Shown piece after piece: positions 23,275-61,766 of a DNA stretch of 64,000 bases (position 1 is the stretch's first letter; each line of letters starts with the position of its first letter). Below the pieces are notes generated by a model, which was given only the letters and a program-made list of their open reading frames with translations, ran no database searches and had not been told where the DNA came from. Made by a program: the position numbers and the translations under genes. Origin of the DNA: Obrimoposthia wandeli (taxonomy: Eukaryota); the NCBI GenBank assembly GCA_977020255.1, contig CDROCS010005920.1:1-64000 (forward strand), in the 5' to 3' direction.

Positions 23275-23333
23275 AAACTGTGATTTGGACTAAATAATGA
23301 AACTATGATTTGGACTAGACAATGAAACTGTGA
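23275..23333 (+). repeat. 25-bp tandem repeat, about 2.4 copies, in the promoter of the PtsG paralog
   Basis: AAACTGTGATTTGGACTAAATAATG / AAACTATGATTTGGACTAGACAATG / AAACTGTGA. Confidence 0.9.
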
Positions 23334-23336
23334 CTG

Positions 23337-23394
23337 TTCACTTGAAATAAAAAATGCCATTAAACTTACAATTGAAGCTTTGATCGAAATCAAA
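23337..23394. promoter_or_regulatory. TTCA-CT-TGAA operator candidate (23337-23346) and CRP-like site TTTGA-N6-TCAAA (23379-23394)
   Basis: Direct motif reading. Confidence 0.55.
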
Positions 23395-23468
23395 ATGTGA
23401 CATATATGAAATCAGGATACTTCCACTCGAAAGCATTAATGCAAAAATACTAATTACAAGAGGTCACT

Positions 23469-42393: not shown

Positions 42394-43240
42394 GGGTCTG
42401 TTGAAAATTAATTAGATAAAGCAGATCTACTCAGTGATGGGTTCAATGATTACTGGTAAACAACCTCAACATTGAAGAGACGATTCATGAAGGCGGATCT
42501 CTCCCGCACCAGGGTTTTACATTCATCATGACGTAACCAACAATCAAACTGGCCTTTGTTCAACATCCGTAATGATTCGAATCCTTGAATAGTTGACCAG
42601 GCTCGTTTTCGTATTTTAAAACCACCGGTGGCTACAACAAGCTTCTTGATAGGGGCGTGATCAGACTCGATACCATTATTGAGGCACTTAACTTGCCCTG
42701 CTCGACATCCGCTCGCAGTCGTCCCTCCTTCTTTAAGCGGGCAATCGCATTGGCGTATGAGGAATGTTTGTCGGTGTTTAACGTTTTAGGCTGATTGTCT
42801 ACGTCGTAATATCTCAGGCAACGCCTAAGAAACTGATAAGTAGCTTCTTTATTATTACGCTTGTGAGAGAAATAGAAATCCAGCGTCTCGCCTTGTTTAT
42901 TGATAGCACGGTAAAGGTAGTACCATTTCCCCTTCACTTTGACGTAGGTTTCATCAAGCTGCCACGAAGAGTCTGTCCGGATGAATTGATGGCGACGTAG
43001 CTTCTTACGTAATACTGGGGCATATTCAATAAACCAACGAAAATGGTCGAGCGATTAACCGAAATCCCCCGCTCTGCCAGCATGTCGCTGAGGTTCACGT
43101 AGCTCATTGGCGAAGGCACCAAAGGATGATTTCAGGAGCAAAGTGTTTCCATTTGAATTCGGGGTTGGTCATTGAGTTGCTAGATTAGAGAGGGAAAAGA
43201 AGGGATTCTGGGCCTTGGTTAAATTTTTTGCAACATATAT
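42394..43240 (-). mobile_element. IS6 type-C copy, frameshifted
   Basis: High identity to 12530-13389. Confidence 0.9.
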
Positions 43241-43388: not shown

Positions 43389-43727
43389 ATGAAACTTATT
43401 GCCGTTACTGCTTGTATCAGTGGTGTTGCACACACATATATGGCCGCTGAGCAGCTGGAAAAGCTGTGCCGAAAAAAAGGTTTTCATATTAAGATTGAAA
43501 CTCAAGGAGCATTAGGCGTAGAGAATACTTTAAGCTGTGAGGATATTGACGCTGCAGTAATCGTCATCATTGCTGCTGATATCAACATAGAAGGTTTTGA
43601 GCGTTTCCAGCGTAATCGAATTATTAAACTATCGATAAAAACTCTCTTGAAAAATCCAAATGTCATTTTGTTTACCATTGATAAAATACGGAATGCTCCA
43701 CCGTCAACCGTTATTGAAATTACTTAA
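43389..43727 (+). CDS. frwD: PTS fructose-like EIIB, FrwD type
   Basis: AVTACISGVAHTYMAAEQLEKLC..IETQGALG.EN.L. Confidence 0.88.
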   Translation: MKLIAVTACISGVAHTYMAAEQLEKLCRKKGFHIKIETQGALGVENTLSCEDIDAAVIVIIAADINIEGFERFQRNRIIKLSIKTLLKNPNVILFTIDKIRNAPPSTVIEIT

Positions 43728-44582
43728 CTGGCTTCGATATTGAACCCGATATTCTGTCGGAGATCTACCTGTATTTAGACGGAAAATCCGACAAAAGTAA
43801 TTGCTATCACTAAATCCACAACGATGTGCTACTTCTTTTACTTTCATATCGTATCGCTGTAATAAATATTTGGCCCTTTCGAGGCGTGTTTGATTGAGGT
43901 ATGCATTGAAACGTATTTTCCCTTCTCGATGAAACAACTGCGATAAATAATTGGCTGATATATAAAATTGTGTAGCCACTAATTCTCTGGTTAATGGCTC
44001 TTGATAGTGTATCTTAATATACCCGCGAATTGCTTCGAATAACGTTTGACTACGCGAGAGGGTCTCTGGAGGGTGCTGAATAAGGTCTAGAGCATGACTC
44101 AGCAGCGCGCTGACAAGTAAACATGCAGTAAATTGATCTTCAGGATGCTTGGTGAGCTCTTCCAACGATCTAAGAATGAATGTTCCGATACGAGGGCCTC
44201 GTCGTTGAACACTCTCCTTACTTAGCACCTTGAAATTTTCGCCATCCCAGTGAAAAATACTGAATCCTAAGGTTTGTTTACCAAAAAGTAAGCTCAATAT
44301 CGTTGCGGGCTGCTGCCAATCAGCTTTATTCCAACTAAATGAAGGGAGAAACAACGCCTGTCCAAAAGTCAATTTTTCCGTATAGCTTTGTCCTTCACCG
44401 CCAATGTCCATAGGCACTACACCCTTGATGACTAATTCTAATCGGGGGAAATTGACCTGATAGGCTAACTCCGGTGGCTCTGATTGGTTTCCGGCAAAAA
44501 ACACTTGATTTAACTGAGTCGGATCATGAACGAAACGGTTCAACTCTTCATAAAGAAGTAGATCGTGAATTTTTGTAATCAT
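43704..44582 (-). CDS. yijO: AraC-family regulator YijO type
   Basis: YQVNFPRLELV, SLLFGKQ.LGFS, QRRGPR.G..I; convergent overlap with frwD as in E. coli. Confidence 0.88.
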   Translation of the reverse strand: MITKIHDLLLYEELNRFVHDPTQLNQVFFAGNQSEPPELAYQVNFPRLELVIKGVVPMDIGGEGQSYTEKLTFGQALFLPSFSWNKADWQQPATILSLLFGKQTLGFSIFHWDGENFKVLSKESVQRRGPRIGTFILRSLEELTKHPEDQFTACLLVSALLSHALDLIQHPPETLSRSQTLFEAIRGYIKIHYQEPLTRELVATQFYISANYLSQLFHREGKIRFNAYLNQTRLERAKYLLQRYDMKVKEVAHRCGFSDSNYFCRIFRLNTGRSPTEYRVQYRSQLSNFNNG

Positions 44583-44797
44583 TTGTTAGCCATTAGCACC
44601 TAAGTTTAACGTTAATTTTTTAACGGTTTAACTATAAATATTATAATATAGAAATTAATAAACCACAGTTAATGAGATCATCATTAGCATTCCAGCTTCT
44701 GAAAAATAAAGGGTCCATAATGTTTATCCTTCATTTTTCAGTGCACTCTGATCACATCAGAGCTGTATAACCACGGTCTGACGTGACACGATGCGCA

Positions 44798-45097
44798 TTA
44801 GCTGATTGTATAGTCCAATACAATAATATCTTCCAGAACAGGACGAAAGATAGACTTTAGCGCATCATGTTTTTGATGAGACAAATAGGATTGTCTACTA
44901 GCTTCGTCACGGAAGGTCATCAGCACGCAGTGTGTATAACCGCGATTTTTACCTTCAGGACTGTCATTTTCACCCAATTCAACGGTTTCGATACCCTCGA
45001 TAGCCTCTGGGAGAATAATAAAAGCGTCTTTTACAGCATCAATTTGTGATTGTGGCACATTGGATTTGAATTTAATTAGTAAAATATGTCGGATCAT
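44798..45097 (-). CDS. Dabb (stress-responsive A/B barrel) protein
   Basis: MIRHILLIKFK, GENDSPEGK..GYTH, YL.H..H, IIVLDY. Confidence 0.9.
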   Translation of the reverse strand: MIRHILLIKFKSNVPQSQIDAVKDAFIILPEAIEGIETVELGENDSPEGKNRGYTHCVLMTFRDEASRQSYLSHQKHDALKSIFRPVLEDIIVLDYTIS

Positions 45098-45248
45098 ATT
45101 GAATACTCTCTTTTTACATTTTGTGTAAACTAAATTTATACTCTTACTTCTGAAGAGTGTTGGGAATATTAACTTACCTTTCGAAGCTCAATGTGAATTG
45201 ATATAAATCTGCAAACCAAATAGTGAAAGGTAGCTAAATTTTTAGATA

Positions 45249-46013
45249 TTAAACGTCTAAAAGCCATTTTTGGGCTGGAGTCAACTTACTCTCAGTCGCA
45301 TGAGTTAACCACCTTTTCTGATCTTGCTGCTGGTGATCATTTCTATCAGCATACAACCCGTGTAATACACGCCGACGAGTTCCAGCTTTGTTTATAGTAC
45401 CACCATGCCAAGTATGAGCATTAAAAATCAAGACACTTCCTGCAGAGCATTCCCAAACCACTTCATTAGGATGAGCTTGATTAAGATCATCTAATACGTC
45501 TTCAGGGAGGTCTGGACAATTATGTGTTCCAGGAATAATTCGAGGTGAACCATTCTCTGCACTTAAATCATCAACAGCCCAAAGCGCATTGACTAAATGA
45601 ACTTTAGGAAAATCTGGACGCGGTTTTTTCCAATCACCATGAAGTGGTTGATGCCCTCCATCTGGGTGTGCTTCACGAGCATTTAAACTTGAGATCTTAA
45701 ACTCTCCTTGGAATATGTGCTTGCATACAGCTAGAACAAGTGGATGAGCCCATACTTTTTCCCATACCGTCCCTTTGTTAATTAAGTTAGCTATTCGTGT
45801 CACCTTCTCTTCTGTATGGTGCTCAATAGCCAATTTACTGCCTTCATTTTCAACTTGTTTATCAAAATTTCGGCGCATTTCACTTAGCCAATCAGGATCG
45901 ATAACATTTGGAACAACTACAAATCCATTAGTATCTAGTTCATCTATCATTTGTTGTGTTAGCGTCATGTCTGCTCCAAGTGCAGATAAATGTTGTTGAG
46001 CAAGTGCTGACAT
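45249..46013 (-). CDS. Phytanoyl-CoA dioxygenase-family Fe(II)/2OG enzyme
   Basis: GFVVV, QPLHGD (HxD), WAVDD...ENGS..IIPGTH, FNAHTWHGG..N. Confidence 0.88.
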   Translation of the reverse strand: MSALAQQHLSALGADMTLTQQMIDELDTNGFVVVPNVIDPDWLSEMRRNFDKQVENEGSKLAIEHHTEEKVTRIANLINKGTVWEKVWAHPLVLAVCKHIFQGEFKISSLNAREAHPDGGHQPLHGDWKKPRPDFPKVHLVNALWAVDDLSAENGSPRIIPGTHNCPDLPEDVLDDLNQAHPNEVVWECSAGSVLIFNAHTWHGGTINKAGTRRRVLHGLYADRNDHQQQDQKRWLTHATESKLTPAQKWLLDV

Positions 46014-46417: not shown

Positions 46418-48304
46418 TTAAACAACAAAAGTAAATACTTTTTCATTCAATTTTATAGCTTGGTTACTTAGCACTTCTGCTTGACTACGAGCTGCAACAG
46501 CACCTTCTACAAGCTGATCTGTTACGTCTTTAATTGTGGTTGTATTTAATGTAATTTCACTTGTTACATGCGTTTGTTCTTCTGCTGCAGTAGCTATTTG
46601 TGTCGCCATATCACTAATTAAAGCCACTGAGTCGTTAATCTGCTCTAATGCTACTGTTGCTTGGTCTGCGTCGTCTACCGAACATTGCGCAAGCTGAGAG
46701 CTTGTTTCCATCAAGGCAACCGCTTTCGATGTTGTCTGTTGTAATGTCGCAATCATACTCTGAATTTCTTCAGTCGATGTATGAGTACGTTGAGATAACA
46801 CGCGTACTTCATCAGCCACAACAGCAAAACCTCGCCCTTGTTCACCCGCTCTTGCTGCTTCAATTGCAGCATTCAATGCCAATAAGTTTGTCTGTTCTGC
46901 AATACCTTGAATAGTAGATAAGATACTGTTGATGTTCTGAGCATGATCATTCAACTCACTAATCACAGTCGTTGCCTGATTCACTTCTTCTGCTAGATTG
47001 TTGATAGACACTCGGCTTTGTACAACTAACTCACGACCACTGTTTGTATACTCTGTCGAAACTTGTGCTGCACGCGCTGTTTGCTCTGCATGAGACGCAA
47101 TTTCTTGTGTAGCTGATGCCATTTCCGTTACCGCGGTGGCAACCATGCTGATTTCATCTTGCTGACGACTTAACTCATCAGCCGACTTATTCGCTCGGAA
47201 TTCACTTTCTGCCGAAGCCTGACTCAGCTCAACACCTTGGCTGCGAATATGACCAATAAGACCCTGTAAACTTGCTGTAAACTGGTTAAAATTACGGGCT
47301 AATTCACCGACCTCATCGTTAGAATCAATATTAATACGTTGAGTTAAATCACCACCGCCTTGTGCAATGACAGCCAGTGCTTTAGATACTTGCTGTAACG
47401 GTTTAAATAAATACACACAAAATAGGTTAAACAGAAACGCACAAATAACCACAACCAATAGCGTCATGAATATCTGTTCATATAATGAGCTGTAAAGAGG
47501 CGCGGCAACAGAATTATAATCAATAACAATAACTGTACTTAGACTTGTACCTTGAATTGGCTTAACAAACACATAGCTTTCATTACCTGTAATATTTTCT
47601 TTTTCAACTAGGCCTTCTCGCGCTAAACGTTTTAGCATTGAATAGGTTAAACCACGGTCTTGTGCACTAACAGATTGATTCAATAAAGACGTATCTGCGT
47701 GCGCAAAAAAATTACCTTCATCATTTACGATAAACATGTAGCCTTCACCAGGCAATACCACATCATCAAGTTGCTTGATGATATCTGACATTTCGACATC
47801 AGCACCTAGAACGGTCTGCTGCCCAAAAATAGAAATTGCTTTCCCCATAGAAACAACATTTGACCCTGTGGCCGCTGCAACGGTCGGATTTTCTATCGTC
47901 ACTTTACCATTAAGGTTAATCGCATTTTGATACCATTGCCATTGGCGAGGATCATTATCACCTGATGGTAAGATAACGTTATTTGCATTCACTTGTGTAC
48001 CATCAGAAAAAGCTAAAAAAACATTATCAAACCCTGCTGAATCGCGAACCTGCTGAAGATGTTGACCAAGCGTGTCTTGTGAAATATTCACAGGTATAGC
48101 GGAAAGTACTGTTCCTTTCGACTCTAACCAATTAGAAACATAATTATTGTACGAAGAAGCTGTACCATTAAGTTGCTTATTAATGTCACTATCTAAACGA
48201 CCTAGCGACGATAAAAAAGAAAAAGCAGTTACAAGTAAACCGCCGATAATGATTGCAATACTTGCAGAAAGAGCCAACTTTATTCTGAGTGTCATATTAA
48301 ACAT
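46418..48304 (-). CDS. Methyl-accepting chemotaxis protein (dCache-HAMP-MCP)
   Basis: 2 TM, YDPR.W.WY-like Cache motif (NDPRQWQWY), [34 protein letters not shown]. Confidence 0.95.
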
Positions 48305-48658: not shown

Positions 48659-49747
48659 TTATTTTTCACTACCAATACAATGTGCTGTCAAAATAGCTGA
48701 CAATACAGCATTTGGCGTTACATCAAATGGCATATTATGAATTGTTTCTCCTTCTGCGCAGGCAGCTTCGGCAACGTCCCTTAAATTATCAAGATTAATA
48801 TTTTTTATCCCCATATCGGTTAAATTAGTTGGTAACCCAACGCTTTTACAGAAATTAATAACTATATTAATTTCATCCATAGGTGCATTCTCAAGTACCA
48901 GTTGTACTAATGTACCAAAAGCGACTTTTTCACCATGGTATAGATTGTGGCATTCTTCTAGTTTGGTTAAGCCATTATGTATAGCATGGGCTGCGGCAAG
49001 ACCACTGCTTTCAAAACCAATACCACTTAGATATGTATTAGCTTCAACAATATTATCAACGGCTTTTGAAGACAGTCCGTTTTCGACAGCAATTTTGGCT
49101 TTCATACCATCAGCTAGTAGCGTTTCATAACACAGTTTGGCTAATGCTTGAGCTGAACGAGTCGGTGCACCACCGGCCATAGTCATTTTTCCCGAGATTG
49201 CATTAGCCCGAGCTTCAAAATGAGTAGAAAGTGCATCACCCATACCGGCCACCAATAAGCGAACAGGTGCCTGAGCAATGATCTTTGTATCCATGACCAC
49301 CATATTTGGATTGGTTGGTAGTAGCAAGTACTCGCTAAACTCACCTTCAGGCGTATAAATAACAGCAAGCGCACTCGTTGGTGCGTCAGAAGAGGCAATC
49401 GTAGGCACTAAAACGACCGGAATTTTATTGTAGAAAGCAATGGCTTTAGCTGTATCGAGTGTTTTTCCACCACCAATACCAATGACCACATCAGCATTGG
49501 CATTTTTGCTAATATCTAATAAGCGATTAATTTCAGGCTGAGAACATTCGCCATTAAATAGTTCCATTGTTAATGTCATGCAAGTGTTTTGGAAACTACT
49601 GTCCACGGTTCCGCCAACTAAGCCAGTAACAAACTCATCAGCGATAGCTATCGGTGCATTACCATAAGGCTTCACGTATTTAGCGAGTGAAGAAAGCACA
49701 TTTTCACCTTGAATATACTTACCCGGGCTGATAATTATTTTGTCCAT
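48659..49747 (-). CDS. gldA: Glycerol dehydrogenase (hydroxyacetone reductase)
   Basis: SPGKYIQG, GGGKTLDTAK, GMGDALST.FEA, AAAHAIHNGLT, HGEKVAFG. Confidence 0.95.
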   Translation of the reverse strand: MDKIIISPGKYIQGENVLSSLAKYVKPYGNAPIAIADEFVTGLVGGTVDSSFQNTCMTLTMELFNGECSQPEINRLLDISKNANADVVIGIGGGKTLDTAKAIAFYNKIPVVLVPTIASSDAPTSALAVIYTPEGEFSEYLLLPTNPNMVVMDTKIIAQAPVRLLVAGMGDALSTHFEARANAISGKMTMAGGAPTRSAQALAKLCYETLLADGMKAKIAVENGLSSKAVDNIVEANTYLSGIGFESSGLAAAHAIHNGLTKLEECHNLYHGEKVAFGTLVQLVLENAPMDEINIVINFCKSVGLPTNLTDMGIKNINLDNLRDVAEAACAEGETIHNMPFDVTPNAVLSAILTAHCIGSEK

Positions 49748-49826
49748 TTTTTTTCCTTTTTAATTTATAACTAAAATGATTAAATATTCCGCAATTTTTT
49801 CAAATGGTTTACATATGACTTCTTAA

Positions 49827-50756
49827 CTATTTTTTCAAAATACCGACAAATCGATCTTGTTCACAAACTATTAAAGCTGAAATTTTTTTCTCCTCCATCA
49901 ATTCCAATGCTGCATGAATCGATGTATCGGGAGTCGTCGTGATCGGTAGTGGAGAACTAATACTAGAAGCGTCTAAAACAAAAATTTCTTTTTGGTACTT
50001 TTCTATCGCTCGGCGCAGGTCACCATCAGTGATCACTCCCACAACCTCTTGATGTTCAACTACGAGGGCTAGACCTAGTTGCCCTGTCGAAATGACGGTT
50101 ATTACCTCTACAAGTGTGGTTTGACAACTAACAATCGGTAGGTTCTCAGTGATCATGTCATCACTGACCCGACCTAATAAGCGCCGACCCAGACTACCGC
50201 CAGGATGAAAGCGGGCAAAATTTTCGGGCCTGAATTGCCTTGCTTGCATTAAAGCGACTGTCAGTGCATCGCCCATGACTAAAGTGGCAGTTGTCGATGC
50301 GGTTGGTGCTAATTGGAAAGGACAAGCTTCCTGAGGAACTGAAATATTAAGATGGCAATGTGAATTACTAGCTAAAGTCGACCACTGTTTACCAGTAATA
50401 GCGATAATCTGATTATTGTTTTCTCGCAAGAAAGGAAGTAACTTAAGTACTTCATCGGTTTCGCCTGAATTGGAAATGGCGATAAAGATATCTTCAGATT
50501 TCACCATTCCCAGATCACCGTGGAAAGCTTCGGCAGGATGCATGAAAAAGCTAGGTGTACCGGTACTGGCTAACGAGGCGGCTATTTTTTTTCCAATAAT
50601 ACCTGACTTTCCCATTCCACATACAATGGTTCGGCCTTTTGTGGCTAGGATCATATTAACCGCTTGAGTAAAGTCGTCACCCAGATTATCCGCCATGAAT
50701 TGAAGACCACTGATCTCAGCTTGAATAACTTCTTTTGCAGTGTCTAATCGACTCAT
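49827..50756 (-). CDS. KpsF/GutQ-family sugar-phosphate isomerase (SIS + 2 CBS)
   Basis: GMGKSGIIGKKIAA, HPAEAFHGDLG, SGET, APTASTT, FHPGGSLG. Confidence 0.92.
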   Translation of the reverse strand: MSRLDTAKEVIQAEISGLQFMADNLGDDFTQAVNMILATKGRTIVCGMGKSGIIGKKIAASLASTGTPSFFMHPAEAFHGDLGMVKSEDIFIAISNSGETDEVLKLLPFLRENNNQIIAITGKQWSTLASNSHCHLNISVPQEACPFQLAPTASTTATLVMGDALTVALMQARQFRPENFARFHPGGSLGRRLLGRVSDDMITENLPIVSCQTTLVEVITVISTGQLGLALVVEHQEVVGVITDGDLRRAIEKYQKEIFVLDASSISSPLPITTTPDTSIHAALELMEEKKISALIVCEQDRFVGILKK

Positions 50757-51241
50757 GGCTTACCCTCTTCTGATTTTTCGTCTTGGCTTAGAAAACTGTT
50801 TAACACATCAATAATAAGCTGATGGTCTTCTGCCTGAGGCAGTCCTGAGATACTGATTGCACCTACGATTCCGACGTTACGAATGGTCAGCGGAAATGAA
50901 CCACCATAAGGAGCATATTCTTTAGGATCGACTAAAGAGCGCTCTTCAATAGTTTTACCTTTGGCCTTACATGCGTTGCCCATATACCAAGAGCTACACT
51001 GATAGCGTTTTACCACATTACGCTTACGTCGGATCCACTCAGAATTATCTATGGTGGTACCCTGCATGGCATAGAAAAACAAACATTGACCGTTGAACGT
51101 AATATCAATCGTAATATTGACTTCGCGTTGCTCAGCCAGTACTTTAATTGCTCCACCTAACTCCCAAGCGCGTTGGTGATTAAAGAAGTGAAATTGAAGA
51201 TGCTGTTCCTGTGCTGCGATTTCATTAAGTATGTCGTTCAT
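50753..51241 (-). CDS. UPF0303 / GlcG-HbpS-like (heme-degrading domain) protein
   Basis: DN..WIRRKRNVV.R...SSW, GGSFPL, VGAISISGLPQ.EDH. Confidence 0.85.
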   Translation of the reverse strand: MNDILNEIAAQEQHLQFHFFNHQRAWELGGAIKVLAEQREVNITIDITFNGQCLFFYAMQGTTIDNSEWIRRKRNVVKRYQCSSWYMGNACKAKGKTIEERSLVDPKEYAPYGGSFPLTIRNVGIVGAISISGLPQAEDHQLIIDVLNSFLSQDEKSEEGKP

Positions 51242-51281
51242 ACCATTCTCTTATTTATTAGAATTTGAAACTACCAACATG

Positions 51282-52322
51282 CTATAGATAGATCCGACGC
51301 TCTTGCTCATCGCTTCGATAGGCAGCTTCGATGATTTCAATGACAGCTAGTGCTTCTTTGGCTAAAACAGGTAATACAGAGCCGGTTCTGATCGCATCTG
51401 CAACTTGAAAGTAGAATTGCTCGTAACCTCCATGGCAAGTCGGAATGATTTCATTATGGGGTTGTTCATCAGAAATATAGCCAGCACAACCATACAACGC
51501 GGGCTTATCAACGCCCCACTCTAGACTCTCTGGGCCAATACTTTGTCGCAGAAGATCCTCTTGAAGATCCATGCCGTATTTTATGAAAGAACCTTTGTCG
51601 CCAAAGATTTGAAAACGTGGGCCGGGTGTTGTACTTAGGCAGTTACCATGCAAGATCACTTCTCGTGTCGGGTAGCTCAGGATGAGATGGAAATGATCAA
51701 CAGCTTGAGTTCCTATACGTTGATATCGCAAATGGGCATCAACAGAATCAGGCATACCAAAAAGCTGCAAAGCTTGATCTATCAGGTGTGAACCTAGGTC
51801 ATACAAAATTCCAGAGCCAGGCTCATCACGTTCTCGCCAACGTTCCTTAACATGTGGGCGATAACGGTTGTAATTGGAAATAAAAGTATGAACCTCACCT
51901 AATTTGCCTTTATCCATTAATTTTTTGATAGTAACAAAATCGCCATCAAAACGACGACTCTGATAAACTGTCAACAGTTTGTTCTGTTCTTTTGCTAATT
52001 GAATCAGTCTTTCACCTGAAGCACTATTAATCACGAAGGGTTTTTCAACCACAACATGTTTGCCTGCTCTAAGAGCCATCGCGGCCATAGCGTAATGTTT
52101 TTCGTTCGGGGTTGCGATGACGACAAGTTCTACCTCACTTTCTGTCAATACATTTTCAATGCTGCTATAAACTTCAACCTGAGGTAACACCGCTTTAACC
52201 TTGTCTGAGTTGCTTGATACAACGGCGGTTAAGTCCAGAGTAGGAACGGATTGAATCACAGGTGTTTGAAAGTAACGCCCGGATATTCCAAAACCGATGA
52301 GGGCTGTTTTGATTGGGTTCAT
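51282..52322 (-). CDS. Gfo/Idh/MocA oxidoreductase (YdgJ/IolW-like)
   Basis: LIGFG.SG, IATPN..H, GKHVVVEKP, YQSRRFDGDF, LYDLGSHLIDQ. Confidence 0.92.
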   Translation of the reverse strand: MNPIKTALIGFGISGRYFQTPVIQSVPTLDLTAVVSSNSDKVKAVLPQVEVYSSIENVLTESEVELVVIATPNEKHYAMAAMALRAGKHVVVEKPFVINSASGERLIQLAKEQNKLLTVYQSRRFDGDFVTIKKLMDKGKLGEVHTFISNYNRYRPHVKERWRERDEPGSGILYDLGSHLIDQALQLFGMPDSVDAHLRYQRIGTQAVDHFHLILSYPTREVILHGNCLSTTPGPRFQIFGDKGSFIKYGMDLQEDLLRQSIGPESLEWGVDKPALYGCAGYISDEQPHNEIIPTCHGGYEQFYFQVADAIRTGSVLPVLAKEALAVIEIIEAAYRSDEQERRIYL

Positions 52323-52448
52323 TCTGTTCTCGACACATGTTGAATTGGACATTGCTATATGAGAACAAAACATTCCCACAATATATCGCTTTGGAAAATA
52401 TAAGGTGGCATCCATATATGGAATGTCGCCATCTTATTTGTCACTAAT

Positions 52449-54959
52449 TTATTGCTCTAATTCAGTTTTAAGAATCTGCTCAACTTGCTCGACAGATTGA
52501 GCATCTAGCAAATTCTGTCGAAACTGTTCGTGCATAATACGACGGGCTAATTTTGAGAAAATTTTCATGTGCTGATCACCGGCCGCATGCTTGTTCAAGG
52601 TTAACATAATGACAAACTGCGCTTCGTCATCGCCCCACAAGATAGGTTTAGCCAGCCTTGTCACACTGATCGTCGACTGCTCAATGTGCTCACTTTTGGT
52701 ATGGGGAATAGCAAAGCCAAAGCCCAAACCGGTTGAGAACACATCTTCTCTTGCCCATAAATCGTCAGCCAACTTATTTTGATATCGGCAGCGACCGGCT
52801 AGGAACAGATTATCAGTCAGAGTCTTGAACACTTCTTCTTTGCTTCGTAGTTCAGCGTCAAGGGTAATGCACTCTTTGGTGATTAATGGTGCGTCAGTCT
52901 GCTCCATACGAAATTGAGCCAGCAGGTGTTCCACTTCTAACGTGGTGCGGCAGTTCATTGCTTTGTTAAGTAGTTGACGGCATAAACGGCTATCAAGCTT
53001 GGCGATACGCTCTTTCGTCGCCGGAATGCTGGGTGCACTCATACTAATTTCATCTAAACCCAGACCAACCAGTAATGGCAGAACCGACCCTTTGGCCCCT
53101 AATTCGCCACATAAACCAATCCACTTTCCATGACGGTGAACTTCTCTTACGACATGATCCAGAGTACGTAAAAATGCTGGGTTCAAGCTATTGTAGGTCT
53201 TTGTAACTTTGGCATTGTCACGATCGACGGCCATTAGATATTGGGTCAGGTCATTTGAGCCGATAGAGAAGAAGTCAATTTCTTCGCAGCACTGATCAAT
53301 AATGAAAGCGACAGATGGTACTTCCAGCATAATGCCCAATGGAATTTTTTCATCAAATGGGAGCTTTTCTTTACGAAGCTCCTGACGGACTTCGGCTAAT
53401 ACATCTTTCACCCAGAGGATTTCTTCAACAGATGAAATCATCGGAATCATGATTTTTAACGGGCCGTGGGCTGATGCACGTAAAATACTGCGTAGCTGGG
53501 TTTTGAATAGCTCGATAAACTCTTCGTAAATTCGTACTGCACGGTAGCCTAGAAATGGGTTTTTTTCTGCTGGGATCTTCAAGTAATCAACGGGCTTATC
53601 GCCACCGATATCGATAGTCCTTACGATAATAGGCTTGTCATTTGCCGCTTCAATCGCCTGACAAAAAATATTGTAGAGTTCGTCTTCATCCGGCGCGCTG
53701 GTGCGGTCCATGTAAAGCATTTCGGTACGGAAAAGGCCAACACTTTCTGCACCATTATTGAATGCCGGTTTGGCTTCAATAGCGTGTGCAATATTGGCGG
53801 CAATTTCAATTTTTATACCATCAGCCGTCTGACCTTGCTGCTCACGAAATAGGCTTTGTCGTTCAGCCACAATATTTGCAACTCGTTGCTCTTCTTGATA
53901 GTAACGAGTGACTTGTTCATTAATTTCAGTAACAACTAAGCCAAGATCGCCATCAAGCAAGACTTCTGAATCGAGATAGTCGGTGACAGAATTTTCATCA
54001 ATGCCAATCAGGGTCGGAATACCAAATGAACGAGCAAGGATAACCGTGTGTGATGTGCTGCCACCATGGGTGAGCATTAGCCCTTTCAACAGGCTCTTAT
54101 CTAGTTCCAGAAATTGGCTGGGTGTTAAGTCATCGGCCAAACAGATCGATGGCCCAGTAAGTATGAGCTTATTATCAAAGTGCTCTTCGCCATACACCGC
54201 TTGCAGCAACTGAAAACAGATATCACGAATATCCAGTTCACGCTCCCTCAGATAGCTGCTCGAAGAGTTCTGAAGTTGTGCGCAATAGTATTGAGCCGTG
54301 GCGATAATTGAGTTGGCACAACTCTGTTTGTCTTCACTCAGGTTCTGTCCCAGTTTTACACGAAACTCCTCATCGTTAAGAATAGATAAGTGTGCTTCAA
54401 TCACAGCAACTTCTGTACCTGCACCAACTTTCTTTTGTAAGGTGAGTGAGGAAGCCACTTTTTCAAGACCTTGAGCCAGCATGACTTGCTCTTCATCGTT
54501 GCTACGAGCAGATGGCAAATCGGTAAGTGCATCAAAGTTAATACTTCCCACACGCAGCAACTTACCTTGACCAATGCCCGTACTAACGGGACGTCCGCGA
54601 ACCAAACTAGGATTTAGATTGCTCAGGTTACGAGGAAGCGGTTCAAATTCACCATCATCACTCTCCGCGATTTCAAGCGCCTCGTCACAATGGGGGAATT
54701 CCTCTTTAATAAACCTGGTTAGCCGCTCAAATGCTGCGGCTTCATCTTCACCCTCAATGGTGATTAAACATTTATCACCATTGAGAGTATCGGTACCAAT
54801 AAGTGATAAAACACTTTTTGCGTTACCTACCACACCAGTGCGCTCATTTCTCCAATTAATAGCTGCTTTAAATTCATTACACAAAGCTTCTATATTGCTA
54901 GCAGGACGAGCATGTACACCATTAGGCAGCTCGCAGGAAAAGGTCAGGGTCTTAGCCAT
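52449..54959 (-). CDS. ptsA: Multiphosphoryl transfer protein HPr-EI-EIIA (PtsA/FrwA)
   Basis: LPNGVHARPAS, TSHTVILARS, GLFRTEML, DFFSIGSNDLTQY, AIPHTKS. Confidence 0.95.
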   Translation of the reverse strand: MAKTLTFSCELPNGVHARPASNIEALCNEFKAAINWRNERTGVVGNAKSVLSLIGTDTLNGDKCLITIEGEDEAAAFERLTRFIKEEFPHCDEALEIAESDDGEFEPLPRNLSNLNPSLVRGRPVSTGIGQGKLLRVGSINFDALTDLPSARSNDEEQVMLAQGLEKVASSLTLQKKVGAGTEVAVIEAHLSILNDEEFRVKLGQNLSEDKQSCANSIIATAQYYCAQLQNSSSSYLRERELDIRDICFQLLQAVYGEEHFDNKLILTGPSICLADDLTPSQFLELDKSLLKGLMLTHGGSTSHTVILARSFGIPTLIGIDENSVTDYLDSEVLLDGDLGLVVTEINEQVTRYYQEEQRVANIVAERQSLFREQQGQTADGIKIEIAANIAHAIEAKPAFNNGAESVGLFRTEMLYMDRTSAPDEDELYNIFCQAIEAANDKPIIVRTIDIGGDKPVDYLKIPAEKNPFLGYRAVRIYEEFIELFKTQLRSILRASAHGPLKIMIPMISSVEEILWVKDVLAEVRQELRKEKLPFDEKIPLGIMLEVPSVAFIIDQCCEEIDFFSIGSNDLTQYLMAVDRDNAKVTKTYNSLNPAFLRTLDHVVREVHRHGKWIGLCGELGAKGSVLPLLVGLGLDEISMSAPSIPATKERIAKLDSRLCRQLLNKAMNCRTTLEVEHLLAQFRMEQTDAPLITKECITLDAELRSKEEVFKTLTDNLFLAGRCRYQNKLADDLWAREDVFSTGLGFGFAIPHTKSEHIEQSTISVTRLAKPILWGDDEAQFVIMLTLNKHAAGDQHMKIFSKLARRIMHEQFRQNLLDAQSVEQVEQILKTELEQ

Positions 54960-55424: not shown

Positions 55425-56504
55425 GTGAATGACCTCATCAAAATCTTAAAAAACACTAGGCAACACCTAATGACAGGTGTTTCACATATGATCCCGTTTG
55501 TTGTTGCCGGCGGCATCTTATTGGCAGCATCTGTAATGCTTTATGGTGAAGGTGCTGTACCTGAAAATGGAACCTGGCTTCATGACTTATTCTTTATCGG
55601 TGTCGCCGGCTTCCAACTTATGGTTCCTTTTCTGGCCGCTTATATTGGCTACTCGATTGCTGACCGCTCAGCATTAGCACCATCGGCCATTGCCGCCTTT
55701 GTCGGTGCAAATATGTACAACACTGGCTTTTTCGGTGCCATTTTTGCTGGCCTGCTCGGTGGTATTGTTGTTTTCTATTTGAAGAAGATAAAAGTACCGT
55801 CATTTGCACGTTCAGTGATGCCAATCTTCGTCATTCCTATCATTGGTACTTTTATTACTGCTGGTGCAATTGTCTGGGGGATCGGTGCACCTATAGGTGC
55901 AATGACAGCATCATTGACTGAATTCCTAAAAGAAATGCAAGGCTCCAGCATTGTAGTGTTGGCTATCATCATAGGGTTGATGATCTCCTTTGATATGGGC
56001 GGACCGGTTAATAAAGTCGCCTATGCGTTCGTTATTCTTTGTGTAGGTGAAGGCCTTTACGATGTTGCCGGTATTAGTTCCGTTGCTGTCGCAGTTCCAT
56101 CTGTAGGTATGGGCCTCGCCACCTTCCTAGGTAAAAAATTGTATGACGATAGTGAGCGAGAAGCTGGTCGTGCTTCCATTCTGATGGGTACGATGGGTAT
56201 CACTGAAGGGGCTATCCCATTTGCTGCCGCCGATCCGTTACGTGTACTTCCTTCAATCATGATTGGTACCGCTTGCGGTGCTGCGACTGCCGCCGTATTA
56301 GGAGTTAAAAGCTATGCCGCCTGGGGTGGCCTGATTGTGTTACCCGTGGTTGATGGCCGCTTTGGGTTCATCATTGCACTGGCTGTTGGTTCGGTTTCAA
56401 CTGCATTAATCGTGAATTTTCTTAAGAAATATACTCGTCAGACACAATCCAAAGTAGACCCAAACCACTCAGGTGAACTGGACCTAGATATTGATATTGG
56501 TTAA
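55425..56504 (+). CDS. frwC: PTS fructose-like EIIC
   Basis: RQHLMTGVSHMIPFVVAGG, FDMGGPVNK, GITEGAIPFAAADP. Confidence 0.92.
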   Translation: MNDLIKILKNTRQHLMTGVSHMIPFVVAGGILLAASVMLYGEGAVPENGTWLHDLFFIGVAGFQLMVPFLAAYIGYSIADRSALAPSAIAAFVGANMYNTGFFGAIFAGLLGGIVVFYLKKIKVPSFARSVMPIFVIPIIGTFITAGAIVWGIGAPIGAMTASLTEFLKEMQGSSIVVLAIIIGLMISFDMGGPVNKVAYAFVILCVGEGLYDVAGISSVAVAVPSVGMGLATFLGKKLYDDSEREAGRASILMGTMGITEGAIPFAAADPLRVLPSIMIGTACGAATAAVLGVKSYAAWGGLIVLPVVDGRFGFIIALAVGSVSTALIVNFLKKYTRQTQSKVDPNHSGELDLDIDIG

Positions 56505-56583
56505 GGCTTCCAGTCACATTTTCCAGCGTTCTCTAATCGCTGGGTACAAAACAAAATTTATTGCTACTTATTGAAAGGTAAAT

Positions 56584-56916
56584 ATGATGAAAAAAGTTAT
56601 TGCTGTTACCGCTTGCCCATCTGGCGTTGCTCATACCTATATGGCTGCAGAAGCAATTGAAACTTCAGCTAAGGCTAAAGGCTGGGAATGCAAGGTAGAA
56701 ACCCAAGGCTCAATTGGTATTGAAAATGAATTGACCGACGATGAAATAACTGCGGCAGATATTGTGATCCTCACCAAAGATATTGGTATCAAAGGCGAAG
56801 ATCGCTTCCAGGGTAAAACCGTTGTCCGCGTTGGTGTGAGCGATGCAGTTAAACGTGCAGATGCTGTAATGGCTAAAATTGAAGCGCACTTTACCAAAGT
56901 AGATGCAAACGCTTAA
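56584..56916 (+). CDS. frwB: PTS fructose-like EIIB
   Basis: AVTACPSGVAHTYMAAE, KVETQGSIG. Confidence 0.92.
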   Translation: MMKKVIAVTACPSGVAHTYMAAEAIETSAKAKGWECKVETQGSIGIENELTDDEITAADIVILTKDIGIKGEDRFQGKTVVRVGVSDAVKRADAVMAKIEAHFTKVDANA

Positions 56917-60200: not shown

Positions 60201-61061
60201 ATGAAAAAGAAAATTTTACTTACGGGTGCCAGCGGTTTTTTCGGTACGCGATTTATTAAAGCGTACCAGCACCAATTTGAGGTTCATGCAACAGATGTTA
60301 AACAATTAGACATCACAAATAACGAACAAGTGATGACAATTTTTGCTGACATCAAGCCTGACTATGTTATCCATGCCGCTGCCATTGCCGTTACGGACTT
60401 TTGCAATAAAAAACCAGAGCTTGCCCATAAAGTCAATGTACAAGGCGCGATCAACGTTGCCAAAGCTTGTCGTAAAATGGGCAGCAAACTGGTCTTTATC
60501 AGTACCGAACAGGTGTTCAACGGTAACAAAGAGCTTGGTCCCTATACGGAAAACGACGTTCCTGAACCAGATACAGTTTACGGCCAAAACAAATTAGAAG
60601 CGGAAGGAAAATTAAAAGAGATTTTAGATGAGCTTTGGACTATTCGATTCACTTGGTTATTCGGTTTACCTGAACGCCAGACTAATATCAATCCAAATGT
60701 AGTTTGGAATACGCTGCAAAGCCTTATTTCAGGGACAAAAATGTTAGAGCGGACCGATGAATTCCGTGGCCTGACCTATGTTCACGAACTAATTGATCAG
60801 TTTGATAAAATATTTGAAATCCCTTACGGCACCTACCATGTTGGTGCCCAGAATGACCTAAGCCGCTATGAGATTACGCGTCACATTCTAGTTAAGCTTG
60901 GGCAAGAAGATCGCTTAGACCAACTACTTGAAGGTATCGATACCCCAACTGTACGTGATATTCGCCTTGATACATCTAAGATCGCCTCACACGGCATTAC
61001 TTTTACTGACAGCCGTGAAGCAATCAATAACTGCTTGGGTGAATTTAGTTTTAATATTTGA
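60201..61061 (+). CDS. RmlD-like extended SDR NAD(P)-dependent reductase
   Basis: TGASGFFG, HAAA...D.C, ISTEQVF.G, YGQNK (YxxxK), G.YHV. Confidence 0.85.
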   Translation: MKKKILLTGASGFFGTRFIKAYQHQFEVHATDVKQLDITNNEQVMTIFADIKPDYVIHAAAIAVTDFCNKKPELAHKVNVQGAINVAKACRKMGSKLVFISTEQVFNGNKELGPYTENDVPEPDTVYGQNKLEAEGKLKEILDELWTIRFTWLFGLPERQTNINPNVVWNTLQSLISGTKMLERTDEFRGLTYVHELIDQFDKIFEIPYGTYHVGAQNDLSRYEITRHILVKLGQEDRLDQLLEGIDTPTVRDIRLDTSKIASHGITFTDSREAINNCLGEFSFNI

Positions 61062-61088: not shown

Positions 61089-61766
61089 ATGATTTACATG
61101 CTAGACACTGCAAACCTTGACGCTATCGCTAAAGCTGTAGATTTTTATCCTCTTGCAGGGGTTACAACCAACCCATCGATTATTGCGAAAGAAAATCGCC
61201 CACTACGTGATATTTTATTCGATATCCGCGAAATTATCGGTCACTTGCGAATGTTACATGTGCAAGTAATTGGTAAAACAGCAGATGTGATGGTGAAGGA
61301 AGCCAATATACTGCATAATATTGATGAAAACTTAATAATCAAAGTACCTGTAACAACTGAAGGTATGAAAGCTATTCGTTTGCTTGCAGCAGATGGTTTT
61401 CGAGTAACAGCAACTGCAATTCTTACTCCACAACAAGCACTTATGGCTGCAGTTGCGGGAGCTGAGTTTTTAGCCCCTTATGTTAATCGCTTAGATAACA
61501 TCTGCGGTGATGGTGTAAAAGTTACGAAAGAAATGGTTCAGCTACTTGACCATTACAACCTGAGTTCAAAAGTTTTGGCTGCATCATTCAAAAATGTTCA
61601 GCAAGTTCAAGATGTAGCAAAGGTTGGTGCGCAATCCATTACTGTCGCCCCTGACGTATTTGATTTACTCATTCAGCATCCATTAACTAATTCAGGTGTT
61701 GCTAGTTTTACCAGTGACTGGGAAAGTGTTTACGGCAAAGGAACGACAATTTTAGATATAATCTAG
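61089..61766 (+). CDS. fsa: Fructose-6-phosphate aldolase (FSA, not transaldolase)
   Basis: LDTAN, GVTTNPS, IKVP Schiff-base Lys; FSA-type Gln (HVQV) and Tyr (APYVNR) instead of transaldolase Glu/Phe. Confidence 0.9.
   Translation: MIYMLDTANLDAIAKAVDFYPLAGVTTNPSIIAKENRPLRDILFDIREIIGHLRMLHVQVIGKTADVMVKEANILHNIDENLIIKVPVTTEGMKAIRLLAADGFRVTATAILTPQQALMAAVAGAEFLAPYVNRLDNICGDGVKVTKEMVQLLDHYNLSSKVLAASFKNVQQVQDVAKVGAQSITVAPDVFDLLIQHPLTNSGVASFTSDWESVYGKGTTILDII

What the first reader, a model, noticed from the sequence alone, without database searches (positions are those of the whole stretch)
48659..54959. ptsA operon expanded with Gfo/Idh/MocA, UPF0303 and KpsF/GutQ where E. coli has fsaB
Seen: ptsA - oxidoreductase - UPF0303 - isomerase (4-nt overlap) - gldA, all on one strand. 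Established: E. coli has ptsA-fsaB-gldA, and the characterised bacterial 1,5-anhydrofructose reductase that forms 1,5-anhydromannitol (Sinorhizobium) is a Gfo/Idh/MocA enzyme. Caveat: this protein looks more YdgJ/IolW-like, and the isomerase keeps arabinose-5-P isomerase motifs. Inference: an undescribed upstream or side branch that converts 1,5-AF or another keto/anhydro sugar into GRE substrates, giving UPF0303 a possible pathway context.
Basis: partly seen in the sequence, partly recalled or inferred. Interest (0 to 1): 0.7.

Follow-up and report, generated by a model that had tools for sequence, protein, structure and literature searches.

The report
Extra genes in anhydro-sugar operon
A marine Photobacterium-like bacterium carries the recently described glycyl-radical pathway for 1,5-anhydro-sugars with three extra genes in its PTS operon. 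Comparison across genomes shows that one of them, the function-unknown UPF0303 protein, is a constant part of this pathway in several bacterial groups and is often paired with a YdgJ-type sugar oxidoreductase.

Summary
On the minus strand lie ptsA, a YdgJ/IolW-like Gfo/Idh/MocA oxidoreductase, UPF0303 (DUF336 fold), a KpsF/GutQ-family isomerase with a 4-nt overlap, and gldA. They face frwCB-pflDC-(RmlD-like)-fsa. The aldolase is therefore not missing; it has moved to the other arm.

The three extra genes do not form a fixed unit.
- **UPF0303:** it lies in all 17 contiguous Vibrionaceae pflD clusters examined. It co-occurs 19/19 with the RmlD-like reductase in a 251-genome sample. It recurs in Hahella, Endozoicomonas and Clostridia pflD clusters. 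It is missing from all 10 E. coli-type clusters.
- **Gfo:** it is optional (10/17 clusters). However, it forms a conserved adjacent pair with UPF0303 well beyond pflD, including 17/57 metagenome loci, often followed by a HAD phosphatase.
- **KpsF-like gene:** it is optional (8/17 clusters) and was recruited twice from different API lineages. Its catalytic residues are intact.

All three genes are under purifying selection.

Best reading: these are accessory parts of the PflD anhydro-sugar regulon that act on keto/anhydro sugar phosphates. The exact chemistry, and whether UPF0303 is an enzyme or a carbonyl-binding helper, remain inferred. This is a new variant of a known pathway and gives UPF0303 a real context.

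The parts
52449..54959 (-). ptsA: fused HPr-EI-EIIA(Fru) multiphosphoryl transfer protein, first gene of the operon
   Evidence: Pfam PTS-HPr, PEP-utilizers N/mobile/C and PTS_EIIA_2; TIGR01417 495 bits; 94% identical to P. lipolyticum
51282..52415 (-). YdgJ/IolW-like Gfo/Idh/MocA oxidoreductase (likely start at 52322). Optional cluster member; widely conserved neighbour of UPF0303
   Evidence: NF008607 350 bits (cut-off 330); PDB 3gfg YvaA E 1e-94; no acidic residue at the end of strand beta2 (AVVSSN); present in 10/17 clusters; dN/dS 0.14
50753..51241 (-). UPF0303 (DUF336/HbpS-like fold); invariant member of the extended pflD cluster
   Evidence: NF002696 200 bits (cut-off 146), PF03928; model pLDDT 94, TM 0.86 to yeast Ybr137w 4clc; invariant E12 W69 R72 K73 S84 G113-P117 S132 G133 Q136 D139 H140; co-occurrence
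49827..50756 (-). KpsF/GutQ-family SIS+CBS sugar-phosphate isomerase; an extra paralogue beside housekeeping KdsD; 4-nt overlap with UPF0303
   Evidence: TIGR00393 328 bits (cut-off 203.7), but below the KdsD and GutQ equivalog cut-offs; K59/H88/E111/E152/H193 equivalents kept; long branch 2.34 in the tree; dN/dS 0.10
48659..49747 (-). gldA glycerol/1,2-propanediol dehydrogenase (hydroxyacetone reductase of the pathway)
   Evidence: NF006941 542 bits; same place relative to ptsA as in E. coli
54960..55424 (.). divergent intergenic control region between ptsA and frwC
   Evidence: position only; consensus scans not above chance
55425..56916 (+). frwC and frwB, fructose-type PTS EIIC and EIIB
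   Evidence: NF007787 576 bits, NF007783 184 bits
57018..60195 (+). pflD (1,5-anhydromannitol-6-P C-O lyase orthologue) and pflC activase
   Evidence: NF007437 1464 bits; PDB 8yjo PflD 1290 bits; CxE at C423/E425 and RVAG at 742; NF007483 421 bits for pflC
60201..61061 (+). RmlD-like extended SDR; the constant partner of UPF0303
   Evidence: PF04321 165 bits, below the rmlD equivalog cut-off; 19/19 co-occurrence with pflD-type UPF0303
61089..61766 (+). fsa, fructose-6-P-aldolase family (DF6P aldolase of the pathway), relocated to this arm
   Evidence: NF009299 221 bits (cut-off 214)
43389..46013 (.). displaced tail of the same regulon: frwD-like EIIB (+), AraC/YijO-like regulator (-), Dabb protein (-), PhyH-type 2OG dioxygenase (-)
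   Evidence: the same block follows fsa in other Vibrionaceae

Best explanation
The five-gene minus-strand operon is the PTS arm of a 'Vibrionaceae-type', extended version of the PflD anhydroglycolysis regulon. The known core is: PTS uptake, then 1,5-anhydromannitol-6-P, then PflD/PflC to 1-deoxyfructose-6-P, then Fsa to G3P plus hydroxyacetone, then GldA to 1,2-propanediol. The extra genes are accessory parts that work on keto/anhydro sugar phosphates around that core. UPF0303 is a constant component. It always travels with the RmlD-like reductase, so it most likely serves the step that E. coli-type clusters lack: handling a 2-keto sugar phosphate (1,5-anhydrofructose-6-P) on its way to the lyase substrate. 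It would do so as a DUF336-type carbonyl/ligand-binding protein or a small isomerase/tautomerase. The YdgJ/IolW-like Gfo is an optional, probably NADP(H)-accepting ring-ketone oxidoreductase. With UPF0303 it forms a widespread two-gene unit, and here it most likely interconverts 1,5-anhydrohexitol-6-P and the 2-keto form. The KpsF-like protein is an optional aldose-ketose sugar-phosphate isomerase with an intact arabinose-5-P-isomerase active site. It probably acts next to Fsa/GldA, either on A5P/Ru5P (Fsa cleaves A5P) or on 1-deoxyfructose-6-P, which is A5P with a methyl group in place of the aldehyde hydrogen. Shown here: gene content, linkage, co-variation, selection and retained catalytic residues. 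Inferred: every substrate and reaction assigned to the three extra genes.
For: The locus is a PflD regulon: PflD matches 8yjo at 1290 bits and the window also holds a YbiW orthologue (8id7, 1270 bits). The pathway is described in PMC13450708 and PMC12441222. UPF0303 linkage: 18/18 pflD genomes in a 251-genome Vibrionaceae sample carry it, 16 within 7 kb, against 2/233 without pflD. The RmlD-like gene and pflD-type UPF0303 co-occur 19/19. Both are absent from 10/10 pflD clusters of other Enterobacterales families. Both are present in Hahella, Endozoicomonas and 5 Clostridia clusters. The gfo-UPF0303 pair occurs as deoR-gfo-UPF0303 in Vibrionaceae and in 17/57 metagenome loci, 14 of them with a HAD hydrolase next. 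In Clostridia the Gfo and isomerase roles are filled by non-orthologous genes (LGDH/IolG-like Gfo, manA-type PMI), and in Hahella by a mannose-isomerase-like AGE protein. KpsF-like genes entered the cluster twice, once from the GutQ clade and once from the KdsD side, always beside a housekeeping KdsD. Catalytic residues are kept. dN/dS is 0.10-0.14 for all three genes, like the core genes. IolW reduces a ring ketone with NADPH (PMC3176187). FsaA cleaves A5P (PMC6900487). DUF336 relatives bind small carbonyls or haem and sit in catabolic operons with reactive aldehydes (PMC8153426; fold hits).
Against: No biochemical or expression data were available: no RNA run holds the locus. Gfo and the KpsF-like gene are each missing from many otherwise complete clusters, so neither is essential. 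No DUF336 protein is a proven enzyme, and UPF0303 could be regulatory. The KpsF-like protein looks like a normal API, and E. coli GutQ shows that an API paralogue can sit in a PTS operon without a known catabolic role. This organism and most relatives also have YbiW, so an AG6P-to-AM6P epimerisation is not needed. One relative (L036) keeps PTS + RmlD-like + UPF0303 without pflDC/fsa, which a pure feeder role does not explain. The co-occurrence counts come from a few lineages and are not phylogenetically independent. The primary paper (Ma et al., JACS 2024) could not be read.
Confidence: 0.55

Rival explanations
1. Radical-free parallel route. The accessory enzymes open the 1,5-anhydro ring without the glycyl radical enzyme, in the way the levoglucosan and 3-keto-glycoside pathways work. 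Gfo (or the SDR with bound NAD) oxidises AG6P/AM6P at C2 or C3. UPF0303 catalyses the following elimination, enol-ether hydration or tautomerisation. A reductase and an aldose-ketose isomerase (KpsF-like, PMI or mannose-isomerase-like) finish to DF6P or mannose-6-P/fructose-6-P.
For: There is precedent for oxidation-elimination-hydration-reduction of an anhydro sugar started by a Gfo/Idh/MocA enzyme (PMC7676230; 3-keto route in bioRxiv 2024.03.25.586180). The gfo-UPF0303(-HAD) units stand alone without any GRE. L036 keeps PTS + RmlD-like + UPF0303 without pflDC. 'Manno-type' isomerases recur in three non-orthologous forms. The Clostridia Gfo is closest to levoglucosan dehydrogenase/IolG models.
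Against: Strict anaerobes (Clostridia MAGs) carry the accessory genes together with pflD, so an oxygen-tolerant bypass is not the obvious driver. 3-keto-1,5-anhydroglucitol behaved as a stable substrate analogue in a related eliminase crystal. No DUF336 enzyme is known. Gfo is absent from 7/17 clusters that keep UPF0303.
Confidence: 0.15
2. Protective rather than catalytic roles. UPF0303 is an EfgA-like sensor or buffer of a reactive carbonyl (AF6P, hydroxyacetone, methylglyoxal) that throttles uptake or translation. The KpsF-like protein is a plain GutQ-like A5P isomerase that keeps the A5P/KDO pool up while a highly induced Fsa cleaves A5P. Gfo is a general NADPH ketoreductase that detoxifies keto sugars.
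For: EfgA, a DUF336 protein, senses formaldehyde and arrests growth (PMC8153426). The closest folds are all ligand binders: EfgA, HbpS, PduOC, OrfY, NahX. UPF0303 directly follows ptsA where gfo is missing. FsaA cleaves A5P with KM 0.65 mM. GutQ lies at the end of the E. coli sorbitol PTS operon. IolW is described as a general stress protein of unknown physiological role.
Against: UPF0303 co-varies perfectly with a reductase rather than with Fsa/GldA, which E. coli-type clusters also have. Its start/stop codons overlap with gfo in several genomes, which suggests stoichiometric partners. The profile search did not reach EfgA, so conservation of its ligand residues is unverified.
Confidence: 0.2
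3. Passengers: the three genes were inserted into the ptsA operon by chance rearrangement and have no functional tie to PflD (inositol metabolism, LPS precursor supply, an unrelated UPF0303 role).
For: IS fragments and a rearranged regulon tail in the window show local shuffling. Gfo and the KpsF-like gene are dispensable in many clusters. Betaproteobacterial and many soil UPF0303 genes have no pflD nearby.
Against: UPF0303 keeps its position across 17/17 Vibrionaceae clusters and recurs in another phylum. API-family genes were recruited twice independently at the same spot. All three genes are under purifying selection.
Confidence: 0.06
4. Haem reading: UPF0303 ('haem-degrading domain protein') with a biliverdin-reductase-like Gfo/Idh/MocA partner degrades haem.
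For: The NCBIfam/Pfam names and the haem binding of HbpS and PduOC. Biliverdin reductase is a distant Gfo/Idh/MocA member (5b3t, E 7e-16).
Against: The neighbours are PTS components, DeoR regulators, sugar phosphatases, aldolase and glycosidases, not haem uptake genes. The Gfo is 320 bits to IolW against about 62 bits to biliverdin reductase. Many hosts are strict anaerobes.
Confidence: 0.02

Closest known systems
E. coli pflD 'anhydroglycolysis' locus (gldA-fsaB-ptsA <> frwCB-pflDC-frwD-yijO; Ma et al., JACS 2024, as summarised in PMC13450708 and PMC12441222)
   Same: Orthologous PtsA, FrwC/B/D, PflD (CxE Cys loop, glycyl motif), PflC, Fsa-family aldolase, GldA and AraC regulator. Same divergent layout.
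   Different: Adds an RmlD-like SDR and UPF0303 (constant in this type), plus a YdgJ-like Gfo and a KpsF-like isomerase (optional). fsa has moved to the pflD arm and is a different Fsa subtype, 37-42% identical to the fsa genes of E. coli-type clusters. The frwD-araC tail is displaced.
B. subtilis IolW (YvaA), NADP-dependent scyllo-inositol dehydrogenase / E. coli YdgJ
   Same: Best solved relative (E 1e-94). YdgJ subfamily model passed. A ring-ketone reductase type of enzyme.
   Different: Encoded in a PTS/GRE sugar-phosphate operon and paired with UPF0303. No inositol genes nearby. Substrate untested.
Sinorhizobium 1,5-anhydro-D-fructose reductase (AFR, 2glx/4koa)
   Same: Same superfamily.
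   Different: Only distant similarity (47-50 bits, E about 1e-11 to 1e-12); not an orthologue.
E. coli GutQ / KdsD arabinose-5-phosphate isomerases
   Same: SIS + two CBS domains, catalytic Lys/His/Glu/Glu/His kept. Like GutQ, it is a second copy at the end of a PTS operon.
   Different: Below both equivalog cut-offs. Very long branch. The last ~9 residues of the CBS pair are lost and the His after the GKSG motif is Ile. In other Vibrionaceae a GutQ-clade gene holds the same position.
DUF336 proteins with known ligands (EfgA, HbpS, PduO C-terminal domain; yeast Ybr137w as the only solved UPF0303)
   Same: Same fold: TM 0.86 to Ybr137w, 0.65-0.69 to the others. Placement in catabolic operons that generate reactive carbonyls.
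   Different: 16-19% identity to EfgA/HbpS/PduOC. Its own set of invariant polar residues, including an Arg-Lys pair. Its partners here are sugar-phosphate enzymes.
Levoglucosan pathway (LGDH + eliminase + hydratase + reductase)
   Same: Anhydro-sugar catabolism started by a Gfo/Idh/MocA dehydrogenase (PMC7676230).
   Different: No homologues of the levoglucosan eliminase/hydratase were seen here. Resemblance of logic only.

Membership tests
PflD anhydroglycolysis locus | PflD-type glycyl radical enzyme with CxE Cys loop and RVxG glycyl motif, plus its activase | tested here: met
   NF007437 1464 bits (cut-off 1109); 8yjo 1290 bits; C423-x-E425; RVAG 742; PflC NF007483 421 bits
PflD anhydroglycolysis locus | Fructose-type PTS (PtsA, FrwC, FrwB, FrwD), Fsa-family aldolase and GldA in the same locus | tested here: met
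   layout compared with E. coli K-12
PflD anhydroglycolysis locus | Turnover of 1,5-anhydromannitol-6-P to 1-deoxyfructose-6-P | not testable with these tools
   Activity known for E. coli PflD from the literature; inferred here from 73-75% identity to the pflD genes of E. coli-type clusters
UPF0303 (PRK02487 / PF03928 DUF336) | Family model above cut-off and Ybr137w-like fold | tested here: met
   NF002696 200 bits (cut-off 146); PF03928 106 bits; TM 0.86 to 4clc
EfgA-type formaldehyde sensors | Conserved K57/S114/D121 ligand site and close kinship to EfgA | tested here: inconclusive
   K73, S132 and D139 are invariant, with the same S-to-D spacing. But the profile search did not reach 6bws and identity is only 16%.
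Gfo/Idh/MocA, YdgJ subfamily | N-terminal Rossmann domain plus C-terminal alpha/beta domain; subfamily model above cut-off | tested here: met
   PF01408, PF02894; NF008607 350 bits (cut-off 330)
1,5-anhydro-D-fructose reductase (Sinorhizobium AFR) | Orthology to AFR (2glx) | tested here: not met
   47.5 bits, against 320 bits to YvaA/IolW
Arabinose-5-phosphate isomerase (KpsF/GutQ subfamily) | SIS + tandem CBS, subfamily model above cut-off, catalytic K59/H88/E111/E152/H193 equivalents | tested here: met
   TIGR00393 328 bits (cut-off 203.7); residues seen in the alignments to 2xhz/5uqi and E. coli KdsD
KdsD or GutQ equivalogs | Score above the curated equivalog cut-off | tested here: not met
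   KdsD 318.7 against 505; GutQ 297.8 against 481; separate long branch

The most novel reading that the evidence does not exclude
UPF0303, a protein family conserved from bacteria to yeast with no known activity, is the missing catalyst of a widespread, radical-free and oxygen-independent way to use or detoxify 1,5-anhydro-hexitol phosphates. A YdgJ-type dehydrogenase makes the 2- (or 3-) keto sugar phosphate. UPF0303 then converts it, by enol-ether hydration, ring-oxygen elimination or tautomerisation, into an ordinary hexose phosphate or 1-deoxy-ketose phosphate. An isomerase, reductase or phosphatase finishes the job. The PflD clusters would then hold two chemically different solutions to the same ether-cleavage problem.
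Probability: 0.12. Interest if true: 0.85.

Novelty: new variant of a known kind. Interest (0 to 1): 0.62.

Why it matters
The PflD/YbiW 'anhydroglycolysis' pathway was described only in 2024, and from E. coli-type loci. This window shows a second, richer form of the locus that is standard in Vibrionaceae and also occurs in Hahella, Endozoicomonas and Clostridia.

Its two constant additions are an RmlD-like reductase and UPF0303. Together they point to a different entry substrate, most plausibly 1,5-anhydrofructose, which red algae and fungi make from starch.

The comparison also gives UPF0303/DUF336 something it has lacked: a defined metabolic neighbourhood and a recurrent enzyme partner, the YdgJ-type oxidoreductase, often with a sugar phosphatase. 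That turns 'function unknown' into a handful of direct assays. It may also bear on E. coli YdgJ, on B. subtilis IolW (whose physiological role is unknown) and on yeast Ybr137w.

Tried and rejected
- **Class-level pflD search:** 401 Gammaproteobacteria gave no hit beyond the centre genome, so no statistics came from it.
- **Promoter/terminator scan:** counts were not above shuffles, so it gives no operon evidence.
- **Sequencing runs:** no RNA holder was found; only the source sample and marine sediment metagenomes hold parts of the locus.
- **Primary paper:** Ma et al., JACS 2024 is not in the library. Whether it already mentions these accessory genes could not be checked. Other literature searches found nothing on UPF0303 in sugar metabolism.
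- **'Gfo replaces a missing YbiW by epimerising AG6P':** rejected. ybiW orthologues are present in 7/9 gfo+ and 4/6 gfo- genomes, and in the window itself.
- **'The trio is one conserved module':** rejected.
- **EfgA ligand residues:** a profile search to map them onto UPF0303 reached only 4clc and, marginally, 2a2l.
- **Betaproteobacterial and several metagenomic UPF0303 neighbourhoods:** uninformative.
- **Word-based protein search:** it returned only 23 close relatives and no functional names.

Full report
**1. Observation**

The ORF list shows five consecutive minus-strand genes inside 48659-54959: 836, 377, 162, 309 and 362 aa. Pfam and NCBIfam identify them as follows.
- PtsA, with HPr + EI + EIIA-Fru domains.
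- A Gfo/Idh/MocA oxidoreductase of the YdgJ subfamily (NF008607, 350 bits, cut-off 330).
- UPF0303 (NF002696, 200 bits, cut-off 146; PF03928 HbpS-like).
- A KpsF/GutQ-family SIS + 2xCBS isomerase. TIGR00393 scores 328 bits, but the protein falls below the KdsD and GutQ equivalog cut-offs.
- GldA.

The UPF0303 stop and the isomerase start share ATGA. The gfo ORF probably starts at its 32nd codon, judged from the alignment of homologues.

The E. coli K-12 record reads gldA-fsaB-ptsA <> frwC-frwB-pflD-pflC-frwD-yijO. The aldolase is not replaced here. It lies at 61089-61766 on the other arm, after pflC and an RmlD-like gene.

**2. What the locus is**

The plus-strand arm is frwC, frwB, pflD, pflC, an RmlD-like SDR and fsa.
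- The 769-aa enzyme is a PflD orthologue: 8yjo 1290 bits, Cys loop C423-x-E425, glycyl motif RVAG.
- The window also carries a YbiW orthologue with its activase, a DeoR regulator and a PtsG paralogue at 17-25 kb.
- According to the literature available to me, YbiW and PflD are C-O lyases. They isomerise 1,5-anhydroglucitol-6-P and 1,5-anhydromannitol-6-P to 1-deoxyfructose-6-P. An aldolase then splits that into G3P and hydroxyacetone (PMC13450708 and PMC12441222).
- The primary paper (Ma et al., JACS 2024) is not held.

The window is a bacterial contig inside a 1.35-Gb mixed or host assembly. Its nearest genome is Photobacterium lipolyticum, at 80-94% protein identity across the cluster. Parts of the locus occur in marine sediment metagenomes.

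**3. Linkage of the extra genes to pflD**

*Vibrionaceae.* I searched an evenly drawn sample of 251 genomes of the family.
- 18 have pflD (at least 75% identity).
- All 18 have a UPF0303 of this type (47-84% identity). In 16 it lies within 7 kb of pflD on the same contig; in the other two it is on a different short contig.
- Only 2 of the 233 genomes without pflD have this type.
- The RmlD-like gene is found in exactly those 18 genomes plus one more, G201. Its co-occurrence with the pflD-type UPF0303 is therefore 19/19.

Reading 15 fetched clusters plus the window and P. lipolyticum gives 17 clusters.

| Gene | Clusters with it |
|---|---|
| frwCB, pflDC, RmlD-like, fsa, ptsA, UPF0303 | constant (fsa of P. 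lipolyticum lies beyond the fetched flank) |
| frwD, araC | constant in the 15 fetched clusters; displaced in the window |
| gfo | 10/17 |
| KpsF-like | 8/17, one of them SIS-only |
| gldA within the locus | 7/17 |

Gfo and the KpsF-like gene vary independently of each other.

*Other Enterobacterales families.* An order-level sample of 401 genomes gave 10 further pflD clusters. All 10 are of the E. coli type, with no RmlD-like gene, UPF0303, gfo or KpsF-like gene within 20 kb.

*Other gammaproteobacteria.* Hahella and Endozoicomonas clusters have gfo, UPF0303 and the RmlD-like gene.

*Clostridia.*
- Five pflD clusters have both UPF0303 and the RmlD-like gene.
- One has only the reductase and one only UPF0303.
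- Two further clusters are cut by contig ends, and one pflD-like gene has no cluster around it.
- These clusters also carry a different Gfo (LGDH/IolG-like, 24-27% identical to the window's), a manA-type mannose-6-P isomerase and a Cof-type sugar phosphatase.
- In Hahella a mannose-isomerase-like AGE-family gene follows UPF0303.

**4. UPF0303 has a second, wider partner**

Vibrionaceae UPF0303 genes of a more distant type (44-46% identity) sit in deoR-gfo-UPF0303 units, with overlapping stop and start codons.

Of the 80 best metagenome loci that encode a UPF0303, 57 have enough upstream sequence to judge.
- 17 of the 57 have a YdgJ-like gfo (37-46% identical to the window's) immediately upstream on the same strand.
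- In 14 loci a HAD-IA hydrolase follows. GH2 and GH3 glycosidase genes lie nearby in some.
- One JGI genome has UPF0303 beside an AraC regulator and a GH31 enzyme.

The family's recurrent company is thus a ring-ketone oxidoreductase, sugar-phosphate regulators and phosphatases.

In a UPF0303 tree, the gammaproteobacterial pflD-linked copies form one supported clade, and five of the six Clostridia copies that could be placed form another.

**5. The proteins themselves**

*UPF0303.*
- It folds with high confidence (pLDDT 94) and matches yeast Ybr137w at TM 0.86.
- Next come the DUF336 proteins OrfY, HbpS, EfgA, NahX and the PduO C-terminal domain.
- None of these is a proven enzyme. The known functions are haem binding and formaldehyde sensing, and several lie in operons that produce reactive aldehydes (PMC8153426).
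- Across 36 sequences the invariant residues are E12, W69, R72, K73, S84, G113-G114-(S-F)-P117, S132, G133, Q136, D139 and H140. This is a polar site with an Arg-Lys pair that would suit an anionic ligand (inference).
- The spacing of K73/S132/D139 resembles EfgA K57/S114/D121. I could not verify that by alignment.

*Gfo.*
- It is closest to B. subtilis IolW (YvaA). [quoted passage not shown]
- It lacks the acidic residue that marks NAD-specific members.
- It is only distantly related to Sinorhizobium AF reductase.

*KpsF-like protein.*
- Each genome that has it also has a housekeeping KdsD.
- In the tree, the cluster copies have two origins. One group joins E. coli GutQ. The window + P. lipolyticum pair sits on a very long branch (2.34) on the KdsD side.
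- The API catalytic residues are kept in all copies. The window's copy has lost the last ~9 residues and changed the His after the GKSG motif to Ile.

*Selection.* Between the window and P. lipolyticum, dN/dS is 0.14 (gfo), 0.11 (UPF0303) and 0.10 (KpsF-like), against 0.06-0.12 for the core genes. All three are maintained genes.

**6. Mechanism**

*Shown.* This is an extended PflD regulon. UPF0303 and the RmlD-like SDR are its constant additions and co-vary. Gfo and an API-family isomerase are frequent, independently acquired options. In another phylum the same two roles are filled by non-orthologous genes.

*Inferred, best reading (0.55).* The additions serve keto/anhydro sugar phosphates around the PflD step.
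- E. coli-type loci have neither a reductase nor UPF0303. The pair therefore most likely belongs to an entry step that 1,5-anhydromannitol does not need but 1,5-anhydrofructose does: PTS uptake to AF6P, then reduction to AM6P.
- UPF0303 would bind or prepare the carbonyl form, which exists as hydrate, enol or keto.
- By analogy with IolG/IolW, the IolW-like Gfo would interconvert the 2-keto form and the equatorial epimer AG6P, which YbiW can use.
- For the isomerase two chemically sensible targets exist. Fsa cleaves A5P (KM 0.65 mM, PMC6900487), so API + Fsa + GldA link Ru5P, A5P, glycolaldehyde and G3P. Alternatively, 1-deoxyfructose-6-P is A5P with a methyl group in place of the aldehyde hydrogen, so an API-type enzyme could move its carbonyl.

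*Rivals.*
- A radical-free ring-opening route modelled on levoglucosan catabolism (0.15).
- Protective roles, with UPF0303 as an EfgA-like carbonyl sensor and the API as a GutQ-like keeper of the A5P pool (0.2).
- Passengers (0.06).
- A haem reading (0.02).

*Against a pure feeder role.*
- One relative (L036) keeps PTS + RmlD-like + UPF0303 but has no pflDC or fsa.
- Gfo presence does not track the absence of ybiW.

**7. Limits**
- There is no expression or biochemical evidence.
- The co-occurrence counts come from a few lineages and are not phylogenetically corrected.
- Genome samples are samples; 'not found' means not found in the loci or genomes searched.
- The primary pathway paper could not be read.

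**8. Verdict**

The finding is a new variant of a known pathway. Its main value is that it gives UPF0303 a testable context and a partner enzyme.

Noticed in passing
window 43389-46013: This block holds a frwD-like EIIB, an AraC/YijO-like regulator, a 99-aa Dabb protein and a PhyH-type 2OG dioxygenase. In other Vibrionaceae the same block follows fsa. Here it lies beyond gldA, behind a chemoreceptor gene (46418-48304) and near IS6 fragments (40664-41041, 42632-42937). The dioxygenase stays beside araC in at least 10 clusters, including one outside Vibrionaceae (L042). It could be an oxygen-dependent enzyme of the same regulon; hydroxylation of 1,5-AM6P at C1 to mannose-6-P is only a guess.
   Followed up: partly
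L036 (G201:C1:202000-221900): A Vibrionaceae cluster with araC, frwD, RmlD-like, frwB, frwC, ptsA, UPF0303 and the PhyH gene, but without pflD, pflC and fsa.
   Followed up: no
window 17278-24860; G001:C12:95317-97740: A YbiW orthologue with activase, DeoR regulator and PtsG paralogue lies in the same window. In P. lipolyticum ybiW is only about 5 kb from the pflD cluster.
   Followed up: partly
L083-L143 (soil and peat metagenome loci): A YdgJ-like gfo, UPF0303 and HAD-IA hydrolase triplet recurs in 14 loci, some with GH2 and GH3 genes nearby. It looks like a stand-alone module for a sugar phosphate.
   Followed up: partly
L051/L052 8001-11686: UPF0303 lies next to an AraC regulator and a GH31 enzyme, the family that includes the alpha-1,4-glucan lyases which make 1,5-anhydrofructose.
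   Followed up: no
L035 11581-13993 (G210): pflD is split into two overlapping ORFs, through a frameshift or an assembly error.
   Followed up: no
window 62112-62510 (-): A YycE-like glyoxalase-fold protein lies directly after fsa. A link to carbonyl by-products is possible.
   Followed up: no
whole window / G000: The window is a bacterial (Photobacterium-like) contig inside a 1.35-Gb, 6912-contig assembly that holds at least 20 different KdsD-like genes. The 'genome' is therefore a host or mixed assembly with many bacteria.
   Followed up: partly
window 15757-16737: An IS5-family transposase lies beside the ybiW cluster. Together with the IS6 fragments it marks a rearrangement-prone region.
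   Followed up: no
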